Assembly (NCBI RefSeq): GCF_001194135.2
Contig: NC_068997.1
Coordinates: 31,846,088 to 31,910,087, forward strand
DNA length: 64,000 nt
DNA from: Octopus bimaculoides
Taxonomy: Eukaryota
Reading direction: 5' to 3'
Shown: piece by piece, positions 1,057-60,834 of the stretch
Layout: every line of letters starts with the position of its first letter
How positions within the stretch are numbered: the first letter of the stretch is position 1
The notes under the pieces: model-generated
The model's database searches: none
Told to the model about the DNA's origin: nothing
What the model saw: only the letters and a program-made list of their open reading frames with translations
Program-made: the position numbers and the translations under genes

Positions 1057-1135
1057 CAATAATGTTTGCTTGAGTTTTTCTGAATATTGTCCGTCAAGTT
1101 TGCTCAGCCATTTTTGAATAGCATCCAATTTGTAA
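1057..1135 (-). CDS. DHC-like exon (most 3' in window): [26 protein letters not shown]
   Basis: Acceptor ttggtgttttcag|T and a weaker donor TTG|gtataa; 79 nt, phase 2 to 0. Resembles Y..W...D.....L.QPLL. Confidence 0.8.

Positions 1136-60834: not shown

What the first reader, a model, noticed from the sequence alone, without database searches (positions are those of the whole stretch)
1057..60834. Hidden, strongly diverged dynein heavy chain-like gene spanning the whole window
Sequence: 13 small exons with canonical splice sites and matching phases splice into about 658 stop-free codons over 60 kb. Six or so are invisible in the ORF track. Knowledge: the DHC_N1 tail is found in cytoplasmic dyneins 1 and 2, outer-arm and I1/f heavy chains, not in single-headed inner-arm dyneins. 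Inference: hallmark motifs are recognisable but altered ([18 protein letters not shown] for the usual N.PPVAG.I.W; GEIVLVQP for G.T.LP.P; IWNEKL for FW..K..NL). This suggests either a fast-evolving paralog outside the standard DNAH5/8/9/10/11/17/2 set or a tail-only, motor-less dynein-like protein.
Basis: partly seen in the sequence, partly recalled or inferred. Interest (0 to 1): 0.72.

Follow-up and report, generated by a model that had tools for sequence, protein, structure and literature searches.

The report
Octopus divergent dynein heavy chain tail
The window holds 13 real exons, on the minus strand, that encode most of the tail of a fast-evolving dynein heavy chain of Octopus bimaculoides; this animal-specific dynein class was described in 2016, and the gene is almost certainly a full motor gene that public annotation cuts into a tail gene and a motor gene.

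Summary
Thirteen minus-strand exons (60834..1057), all with AG/GT splice sites, join into 658 stop-free codons. These are identical to residues 53-710 of Octopus bimaculoides RefSeq protein LOC128249716 (1084 aa, "uncharacterized"). All assembly gaps lie in introns, and no exon is missing compared with O. sinensis.

The product is a genuine dynein tail: Pfam DHC_N1 gives E=1e-74, and it is colinear with outer-arm beta heavy chains. It is under purifying selection (dN/dS 0.23 against O. sinensis).

It is not a standard DNAH9/11/17 gene. It groups (98% bootstrap) with giant 5355-5930 aa dyneins of lungfish and amphibians and with partial models from gar and a flatworm. This matches Kollmar's (2016) class-13 dynein, which has a beta-like tail, a divergent motor and a low-complexity C-terminal extension.

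The tail-only reading is not supported. In both Octopus species a motor-domain gene model starts about 2 kb downstream on the same strand. In O. sinensis the next colinear exon lies inside that downstream model. In Argonauta the exons run straight from the tail into the linker.

Verdict: a real gene of a known but unstudied class, with split public models. Interest is modest.

The parts
60665..60834 (-). Coding exon, residues 53-109 of P0004 (its first base completes codon 52). It is the first exon of this gene inside the window; the exon(s) for residues 1-52 lie upstream of the window.
   Evidence: tblastn; splice refinement; acceptor tatag|, donor |gtaagt
54099..54292 (-). Coding exon (…[16 protein letters not shown]…ADKMAK)
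   Evidence: 96.4% nt identity to O. sinensis
50391..50516 (-). Coding exon carrying GEIVLVQP, the diverged form of the G.T.LP.P motif
   Evidence: aligned to kgqtllplp of Chlamydomonas beta heavy chain
38153..38374 (-). Coding exon where DHC_N1 starts; carries IWNEKL, the diverged form of FW..K..NL
31699..31847 (-). Coding exon ([12 protein letters not shown]…MWSHST)
24921..25032 (-). Coding exon ([10 protein letters not shown]…EDPDT)
22173..22294 (-). Coding exon ([23 protein letters not shown]…)
20502..20678 (-). Coding exon ([11 protein letters not shown]…KYLNDFMDR). It includes a lineage-specific insert relative to canonical dyneins.
   Evidence: gap between aligned blocks (query 402 to 456)
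16175..16406 (-). Coding exon ([17 protein letters not shown]…FYKLRSVSK)
15317..15436 (-). Coding exon ([14 protein letters not shown]…KQTQVK)
   Evidence: also present in UniProt fragment P0001
7841..8008 (-). Coding exon carrying [18 protein letters not shown], the diverged form of N.PPVAG.I.W
7134..7237 (-). Coding exon ([19 protein letters not shown]…EKFE)
1057..1135 (-). Coding exon ([26 protein letters not shown]). It is the last exon in the window and the gene continues below position 1.
   Evidence: P0004 continues with TTEDYDETEQDRPSVIYVNL…

Best explanation
Identity. The 13 exons encode residues 53-710 of the N-terminal tail of a divergent axonemal-type dynein heavy chain of Octopus bimaculoides. 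The gene belongs to an animal orthogroup of very large dyneins (about 5000-5900 aa). That orthogroup matches Kollmar's class-13 DHC: a tail derived from the outer-arm beta heavy chain (class 4) joined to a strongly diverged motor.

Gene structure. The real gene is tail plus linker plus a six-AAA motor. RefSeq splits it into a 1084-aa 'uncharacterized protein' (LOC128249716) and a downstream motor gene.

How it most likely works (inferred). The beta-like tail dimerises with a partner heavy chain, which Kollmar proposed to be class-12 with its gamma-like tail. It binds intermediate and light chains and docks the complex on doublet microtubules at outer-arm-like sites. The divergent head gives altered force or regulation in a particular cilium or flagellum type, such as sperm.

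Shown versus inferred. Shown here: exon structure, homology, selection, clade membership, and physical continuity of tail and motor exons. Inferred: axonemal localisation, the partner chain, and tissue specificity.
For: - Exon structure and identity to P0004.
- DHC_N1: E=1.3e-74 over residues 202-823, covering profile positions 3-559 of 562.
- Best solved relatives are all outer-arm beta chains and are colinear: Chlamydomonas beta (query 51-1065 against chain 47-1035, E=1e-74), Tetrahymena beta, and DNAH17.
- Purifying selection: dN 0.019, dS 0.083, omega 0.23. Intron divergence is 0.071. There are no indels or stops in either species.
- Closest relatives, at 29-30% identity over the whole tail starting from residue 3: Protopterus 5930 aa, Pleurodeles 5702 aa, Pelobates 5355 aa, Lepisosteus, Amia and Macrostomum.
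- NJ tail tree: this clade has 98% bootstrap and is separate from canonical beta chains, including DNAH11.
- The orthologues carry DHC_N2, AAA_6, AAA_7, AAA_8 and MT.
- A Pleurodeles orthologue has a 556-aa D/E/S/N-rich extension beyond the point that aligns with the DNAH11 C-terminus. This matches Kollmar's class-13 description (PMC5100056).
- A motor-domain gene model lies 2.1-2.2 kb downstream on the same strand in O. bimaculoides (3967 aa) and O. sinensis (4549 aa).
- In O. sinensis a phase-0 donor after …SLSQQ at L001 88681 pairs with a phase-0 acceptor at 91623. The exon it opens is 59.5% identical to Argonauta P0087 residues 207-248 and 37% identical to Pelobates, and it lies inside the downstream model.
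- In Argonauta the exons are colinear with Pelobates residues 1212-1831 across three consecutive gene models.
Against: - No Kollmar/CyMoBase DHC13 sequence was available, so the class-13 label rests on matching the published description. It is not a direct comparison.
- The octopus motor sequence could not be read. Only its Pfam listing and its first colinear exon were seen. The two downstream models differ in length (3967 against 4549 aa), so their quality is uncertain.
- Two independent RefSeq models end the tail gene with a stop, and no RNA data could be examined. A genuine short isoform is therefore not excluded.
- The tree is a simple NJ tree built on tails only.
- One member of the 98% clade comes from an unidentified JGI eukaryote, so restriction to animals was not verified.
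Confidence: 0.8

Rival explanations
1. It is a genuine tail-only, motor-less dynein-like protein of about 1084-1129 aa. It is expressed as its own gene (or as a short isoform) upstream of a separate motor gene, and acts as a scaffold or a competitor for dynein docking and intermediate-chain binding.
For: RefSeq/Gnomon models in two Octopus species end after about 1084 and 1129 residues, and each starts a new gene about 2 kb downstream.
Against: - The two models end at different places with unrelated terminal peptides (…NRELYP against …QQKYADDCHFHCC…).
- The O. sinensis model runs past the O. bimaculoides stop into exons that still match dynein (DIGWIRINMESIKQ).
- A canonical phase-matched splice joins the penultimate exon to a conserved exon inside the downstream model.
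- Argonauta model P0087 spans that junction.
- The complete orthologous models are single 5355-5930 aa motors.
Confidence: 0.08
2. It is simply the octopus orthologue of the canonical outer-arm beta heavy chain (DNAH9/11/17, Kollmar class 4) on an unusually long branch.
For: The best PDB matches are outer-arm beta chains and the alignment is colinear over the whole tail. NCBI names the O. sinensis model 'dynein beta chain, flagellar outer arm-like'.
Against: - Identity to DNAH11 and to protist beta chains is 20-22%, against 29% to the giant vertebrate dyneins.
- The clade with the giant dyneins has 98% bootstrap and excludes DNAH11 and all protist beta chains.
- The inferred total length of about 5000-5700 aa, and the 5355-5930 aa of the orthologues, exceed the roughly 4450 aa of beta chains.
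- The vertebrate clade members have GPEGSGK[K/R] where beta chains have GPAGTGKT.
- Not tested: whether octopus has a separate canonical beta gene.
Confidence: 0.07
3. It is a decaying partial duplicate (pseudogene) of a dynein tail.
For: High divergence from canonical dyneins, long introns full of transposons, and fragmentary early gene models.
Against: - There are 658 codons with no stop or frameshift in two species.
- All 13 exon lengths are conserved.
- Every splice site is intact.
- dN/dS is 0.23 with p=4e-8, while introns and synonymous sites diverge at the same rate.
- The reading frame is also kept in Argonauta at 49% identity.
Confidence: 0.03

Closest known systems
Class-13 dynein heavy chain (DHC13) of Kollmar 2016, Mol Biol Evol 33:3249 (PMC5100056)
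   Same: - Found in animals.
- The tail aligns over its whole length to the outer-arm beta (class-4) tail.
- Similarity to standard dyneins is very low.
- The orthologues seen here have a low-complexity C-terminal extension and extra length after the stalk.
- There is no human counterpart.
   Different: There was no direct comparison with a curated DHC13 sequence. The octopus lineage evolves faster than the vertebrate members (Tajima test p from 2e-3 to 4e-8 with the two closer outgroups, but not significant with Willaertia, p 0.06-0.27). The public octopus models are split in two.
Outer-arm dynein beta heavy chain (Chlamydomonas ODA4/beta, Tetrahymena beta, human DNAH9/DNAH11/DNAH17; Kollmar class 4)
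   Same: A DHC_N1 tail that is colinear from about residue 50 to 1065. Recognisable counterparts of the G.T.LP.P, FW..K..NL and N.PPVAG.I.W motifs. The downstream product lists linker, AAA and stalk domains.
   Different: Only 20-22% identity. It sits in a separate, well-supported clade. It is about 500-1400 aa longer. The vertebrate clade members have a non-canonical AAA1 Walker A. It is probably a paralogue that exists alongside a canonical beta gene.
DNHD1 (human 'dynein heavy chain domain 1'; Kollmar class 11)
   Same: Another highly aberrant, animal-specific dynein heavy chain once regarded as a 'ghost gene'. It is expressed in sperm flagella and needed for their assembly.
   Different: Kollmar lists it as a different class (Table 1). 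No protein identified as mammalian was found among the best relatives of the octopus tail; 20 of the 150 listed hits were looked up. It was not compared directly here.

Membership tests
Dynein heavy chain (tail region, Pfam DHC_N1 PF08385) | Significant match to DHC_N1 above the gathering score, covering the profile | tested here: met
   Four window exons score E=1.3e-09, 37.7 bits, against a cut-off of 28.3. Full product P0004 scores E=1.3e-74, residues 202-823 on profile positions 3-559 of 562.
Dynein heavy chain (complete motor protein) | Linker (DHC_N2), six AAA modules, stalk and C-terminal domain encoded in the same gene | tested here: inconclusive
   A downstream same-strand model with DHC_N2, AAA_6, AAA_7, AAA_8, MT and Dynein_C is present in both Octopus species. 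A phase-matched splice leads into a conserved exon inside that model. Argonauta is colinear and the orthologues are single proteins. The octopus motor sequence and transcripts were not seen.
Outer-arm beta heavy chain (DNAH9/11/17; Kollmar class 4) | Tail homologous and colinear to the beta heavy chain tail | tested here: met
   The four best PDB entries (five distinct sequences) are Chlamydomonas and Tetrahymena beta chains, followed by DNAH17. The alignment is colinear, query 51-1065 against chain 47-1035.
Outer-arm beta heavy chain (DNAH9/11/17; Kollmar class 4) | Groups within the canonical beta clade | tested here: not met
   In the NJ tail tree it sits in a separate clade with giant vertebrate, flatworm and other dyneins (98% bootstrap). 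DNAH11 and the protist beta chains are elsewhere. Identity is 20-22% against 29%.
Outer-arm beta heavy chain (DNAH9/11/17; Kollmar class 4) | Canonical AAA1 Walker A (GPAGTGKT) and a length of about 4400-4600 aa | tested here: inconclusive
   The octopus AAA1 could not be read. The vertebrate clade members have GPEGSGKK/R, GPEATGKK or GPERIGKK, and the complete ones are 5355-5930 aa. The summed octopus models come to about 5000-5700 aa.
Kollmar class-13 dynein heavy chain | N-terminal tail similar to class-4 (outer-arm beta) while the gene is not a class-4 member | tested here: met
   definition read in PMC5100056.
Kollmar class-13 dynein heavy chain | Unique low-complexity C-terminal extension and a longer AAA5 | tested here: inconclusive
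   For the orthologues the extension is met. Pleurodeles P0155 aligns to DNAH11 up to residue 4446 of 4447 and then has 556 further residues rich in D, E, S and N. There are also about 110 extra residues in the C-terminal third of the motor.
Kollmar class-13 dynein heavy chain | Restricted to Metazoa | tested here: inconclusive
   The named clade members are cephalopods, lungfish, amphibians, gar, bowfin and a flatworm. One clade member (JGI) and several fragments are of unknown origin.
Kollmar class-13 dynein heavy chain | Clusters with curated DHC13 sequences (CyMoBase) in motor and tail trees | not testable with these tools
   No curated DHC13 sequence or supplement was available.
Tail-only (motor-less) dynein-like protein | A conserved stop after the tail and no colinear motor exons downstream | tested here: not met
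   The stops differ between the species' models. Colinear exons continue downstream in O. sinensis and Argonauta.

The most novel reading that the evidence does not exclude
Octopods might make a stable tail-only product from this locus as well as the full-length class-13 dynein, using the alternative terminal exons that RefSeq models in two species. Such a motor-less tail could compete for intermediate chains or docking sites and so tune outer-arm composition. A related possibility is that the class-13 head is a non-hydrolysing 'pseudo-motor', as the GK[K/R] Walker A at AAA1 of the vertebrate members hints.
Probability: 0.1. Interest if true: 0.55.

Novelty: new member of a known kind. Interest (0 to 1): 0.3.

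Why it matters
[quoted passage not shown] The searches made here found no experimental work on them, and no localisation, partner or activity has been reported in what was read. Humans lack them, so they have been ignored.

This locus gives three things. First, a clean and selection-supported exon map for the octopus member. Second, evidence that current RefSeq models in three octopods cut the gene into pieces, which would make it look like a tail-only protein in any automated survey. Third, evidence that the same orthogroup survives in lungfish, amphibians and holostean fishes.

This is useful for genome annotation and for anyone who wants to test what a second, divergent outer-arm-like dynein does. 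It does not change how dyneins are understood.

Tried and rejected
- Word-indexed homology searches with four joined exons and with P0002 returned only one and three hits. The full HMMER scan was needed to find the true relatives.
- The third word-indexed search, using the first exon of the O. sinensis downstream model, found nothing. This is probably because that 'first exon' is an annotation artefact lying in an intron. As a result the octopus motor protein sequence was never obtained.
- An exact look-up of P0001 found no contig.
- tblastn with a canonical dynein (P0006) was too insensitive to find exons beyond the tail.
- The exon for residues 1-52 was searched for in the window by tblastn and blastn and is not there. 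Homology to the O. sinensis intron stops at 61326.
Partial orthologues and blastp against DNAH11 were used instead.
- Literature searches on octopus dyneins and on DHC12/DHC13 gave nothing beyond Kollmar 2016. The DNHD1 paper read did not describe its tail.
- The pseudogene and canonical-beta readings were considered and rejected, as set out under the rival explanations.

Full report
**What the window is.**
The sequence is 36% G+C and has nine N-runs. It is packed with microsatellites, LINE reverse-transcriptase fragments and mariner-type transposase remnants. Two UniProt fragments from Octopus bimaculoides match window exons exactly: A0A0L8FUB9 (179 aa) and A0A0L8FV56 (90 aa). The window is therefore O. 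bimaculoides genomic DNA.

**Check of the observation.**
- The cluster of P0001 also contains an O. sinensis RefSeq model, XP_036366171.1 (P0002, 1129 aa, 'dynein beta chain, flagellar outer arm-like').
- tblastn of P0002 against the window gives 13 colinear minus-strand hits, covering residues 51-711 at 85-98% identity.
- A brute-force search for donor and acceptor pairs that keep the frame and best match the orthologue fixes the exons at 60834-60665, 54292-54099, 50516-50391, 38374-38153, 31847-31699, 25032-24921, 22294-22173, 20678-20502, 16406-16175, 15436-15317, 8008-7841, 7237-7134 and 1135-1057.
- Each exon has AG before it and GT after it.
- Joined, the exons are 1975 nt. One phase gives 658 codons with no stop; the other two phases have 39 and 57 stops.
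- The 658-residue peptide is identical to residues 53-710 of the newer O. bimaculoides RefSeq protein LOC128249716 (P0004, 1084 aa).
Seven of the 13 exons are missing from the list of ORFs of 60 aa or more.

**Assembly gaps.**
- All N-runs fall in introns or outside the exon chain.
- The gap-free O. sinensis locus L001 has the same 13 exons with identical lengths, and there are no unaligned residues at any junction. No coding exon is hidden in a gap.
- The two 10-N gaps at 3182-3191 and 3790-3799 are flanked by exact duplicates of 62 and 53 nt. The joined contigs overlap there, so those gaps are artefacts.

**Is it a functional gene?**
- Against O. sinensis, the 658 codons show 30 non-synonymous and 31 synonymous differences: dN 0.019, dS 0.083, dN/dS 0.23.
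- Adjacent intron sequence diverges by 0.071, about the same as dS.
- The deficit of replacement changes is significant (Fisher p = 4e-8).
- There are no indels, stops or lost splice sites in either species.
- Argonauta hians keeps the frame at about 49% protein identity.
- The gene is under purifying selection, although it changes quickly between octopod genera.

**What it encodes.**
- Four exons alone hit Pfam DHC_N1 (E=1.3e-09).
- The full product matches DHC_N1 over residues 202-823, covering almost the whole profile (E=1.3e-74).
- Against all PDB sequences, the best matches are outer-arm beta heavy chains: Chlamydomonas (E=1e-74), Tetrahymena (5e-54) and mammalian DNAH17 (6e-46). The alignment is colinear, query 51-1065 against chain 47-1035.

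**Which dynein?**
- An exhaustive HMMER scan of 1.84 billion representatives gave 677 relatives.
- The closest non-octopod relatives are not DNAH9/11/17. They are giant proteins from Protopterus (5930 aa), Pleurodeles (5410 and 5702 aa) and Pelobates (5355 aa), plus partial models from Lepisosteus, Amia and the flatworm Macrostomum.
- They align to the octopus tail from residue 3 to about 1050 at 29-30% identity (27% for the flatworm). Canonical beta chains, including DNAH11, reach only 20-22%.
- In a neighbour-joining tree of 30 tails (996 columns, 100 bootstraps), octopus plus these proteins form a clade with 98% support. The clade is separate from canonical beta chains of animals and protists.
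- The octopus branch is the longest in the clade. Tajima relative-rate tests against the vertebrate members give p from 2e-3 to 4e-8 with the two closer outgroups, and are not significant with the distant outgroup Willaertia (p 0.06-0.27).
- The gar protein has the normal order DHC_N1, DHC_N2, AAA_6, AAA_7, AAA_8, MT.
- The newt protein aligns to DNAH11 up to its last residue, at only about 25% identity in the motor. It then carries a 556-residue extension rich in D, E, S and N.

**Comparison with what is known.**
Kollmar (2016, PMC5100056) added eight dynein classes to the nine classical ones.
- Classes 11 and 13 are described there as specific to metazoans, and class 12 as holozoan. [quoted passage not shown] - Class 13 has no human gene in the paper's Table 1, and Kollmar proposed that it pairs with class 12 at outer-arm positions.
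- Every one of these features that I could test fits the clade found here.
- I could not compare with a curated DHC13 sequence, because no supplements are held. The class label is therefore an inference from the description, and I give it about 0.8 confidence.
- DNHD1 is Kollmar's class 11 and is a different class.

**Tail-only or full motor?**
RefSeq ends the tail gene after 1084 aa (O. bimaculoides) or 1129 aa (O. sinensis). Several results argue that this is an annotation split.
- In both species a model with DHC_N2, AAA_6, AAA_7, AAA_8, MT and Dynein_C starts 2.1-2.2 kb downstream on the same strand (3967 and 4549 aa).
- The two tail models end at different positions with unrelated peptides.
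- In O. sinensis the penultimate tail exon ends …SLSQQ|GTGAGT at L001 88681, in phase 0. The next exon that is colinear with Argonauta (59.5% identity) and Pelobates (37%) starts after …tttccag| at 91623, also in phase 0. That exon lies inside the downstream 'motor' model.
- The Argonauta model P0087 spans this very junction. In Argonauta three consecutive models (DHC_N1, no domain, DHC_N2) carry exons colinear with Pelobates residues 1212-1831.
- Tail plus downstream model adds up to about 5000-5700 aa, which is the size of the vertebrate orthologues.

I therefore read the locus as one large dynein gene. A short isoform cannot be excluded without RNA data.

**Mechanism.**
- Shown: a conserved, selected, beta-type tail that is physically continuous with linker and motor exons.
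- From established knowledge of outer-arm dyneins: this tail region mediates heavy-chain dimerisation, binding of intermediate and light chains, and docking on the A-tubule.
- Inferred, following Kollmar: the protein forms an outer-arm-like two-headed dynein with a class-12 partner in some cilia or flagella, with a head whose mechanochemistry differs from DNAH9/11/17.

**Limits.**
- The tree is a simple distance tree on tails only.
- Whether octopus also has a canonical beta gene was not tested.

**Verdict.**
The gene is already in public databases, and its class has been described, although never studied experimentally. It is a new member of a known kind. The practical value lies in correcting split gene models.

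Noticed in passing
L001 88681-91745 (O. sinensis), with the equivalent place below window position 1: RefSeq splits one dynein gene into a tail model and a motor model. The O. sinensis tail model's last exon (88983-89195, …KYADDCHFHCC…) and the motor model's first exon (starting 91367, MDTKYERS…) both look like annotation artefacts lying in the true intron 88682-91622.
   Followed up: yes
Proteins P0156, P0155, P0009, P0007 and P0008 (orthologues; not in the window): In the vertebrate members of the clade the AAA1 Walker A reads GPEGSGKK/R, GPEATGKK or GPERIGKK. The Ser/Thr that follows the lysine (Thr in the usual GPAGTGKT) is replaced by Lys or Arg, while AAA2 and AAA3 keep GK[ST]. The main ATPase site may therefore be non-canonical. 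The octopus site could not be read.
   Followed up: partly
window 3182-3191 and 3790-3799: These two 10-N gaps sit inside a LINE reverse-transcriptase fragment and are flanked by exact duplicates of 62 and 53 nt. They are uncollapsed contig overlaps, not missing sequence.
   Followed up: yes
window 5626-5958, 11238-11560, 14328-14722, 17688-17911, 28199-28538, 47801-48011, 53513-53913, 56219-56594, 56628-56997, 60153-60482 and others: A repeat of about 350 bp, 66-81% identical between copies, occurs at least a dozen times in both orientations in the introns and also in the O. sinensis locus. It produces the recurring pseudo-ORF motif …[24 protein letters not shown]…. It is probably an octopus SINE.
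   Followed up: partly
window 2353-4126 (+), 24155-24490 (+), 30211-30681 (+), 62991-63899 (-): Transposon remnants lie in the introns and upstream: an endonuclease/reverse-transcriptase (LINE) fragment and three mariner/Mos1-type transposase fragments (Pfam Transposase_1, HTH_48).
   Followed up: partly
window 60835-64000: The coding exon(s) for residues 1-52 (MYKFVKQQ…SNSKH) are not in the window. Homology to the O. sinensis upstream intron stops at 61326, beyond which there are microsatellites, a gap and a mariner element. The gene start lies beyond position 64000.
   Followed up: yes
L004 (Logan contig from run SRR8281681, 925 nt): An uninterrupted 178-aa ORF that is 40% identical to residues 163-338 of the octopus protein, a stretch that spans three exon junctions in octopus. 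It looks like a spliced transcript of the same class from another species, whose identity could not be determined here.
   Followed up: partly
L002 and L003 (Argonauta hians BAAFZT010000080.1): The Argonauta annotation breaks the same gene into at least three consecutive models (772 aa, 408 aa, 578 aa). It also leaves the exons for about residues 885-950 unannotated between the first two models.
   Followed up: partly
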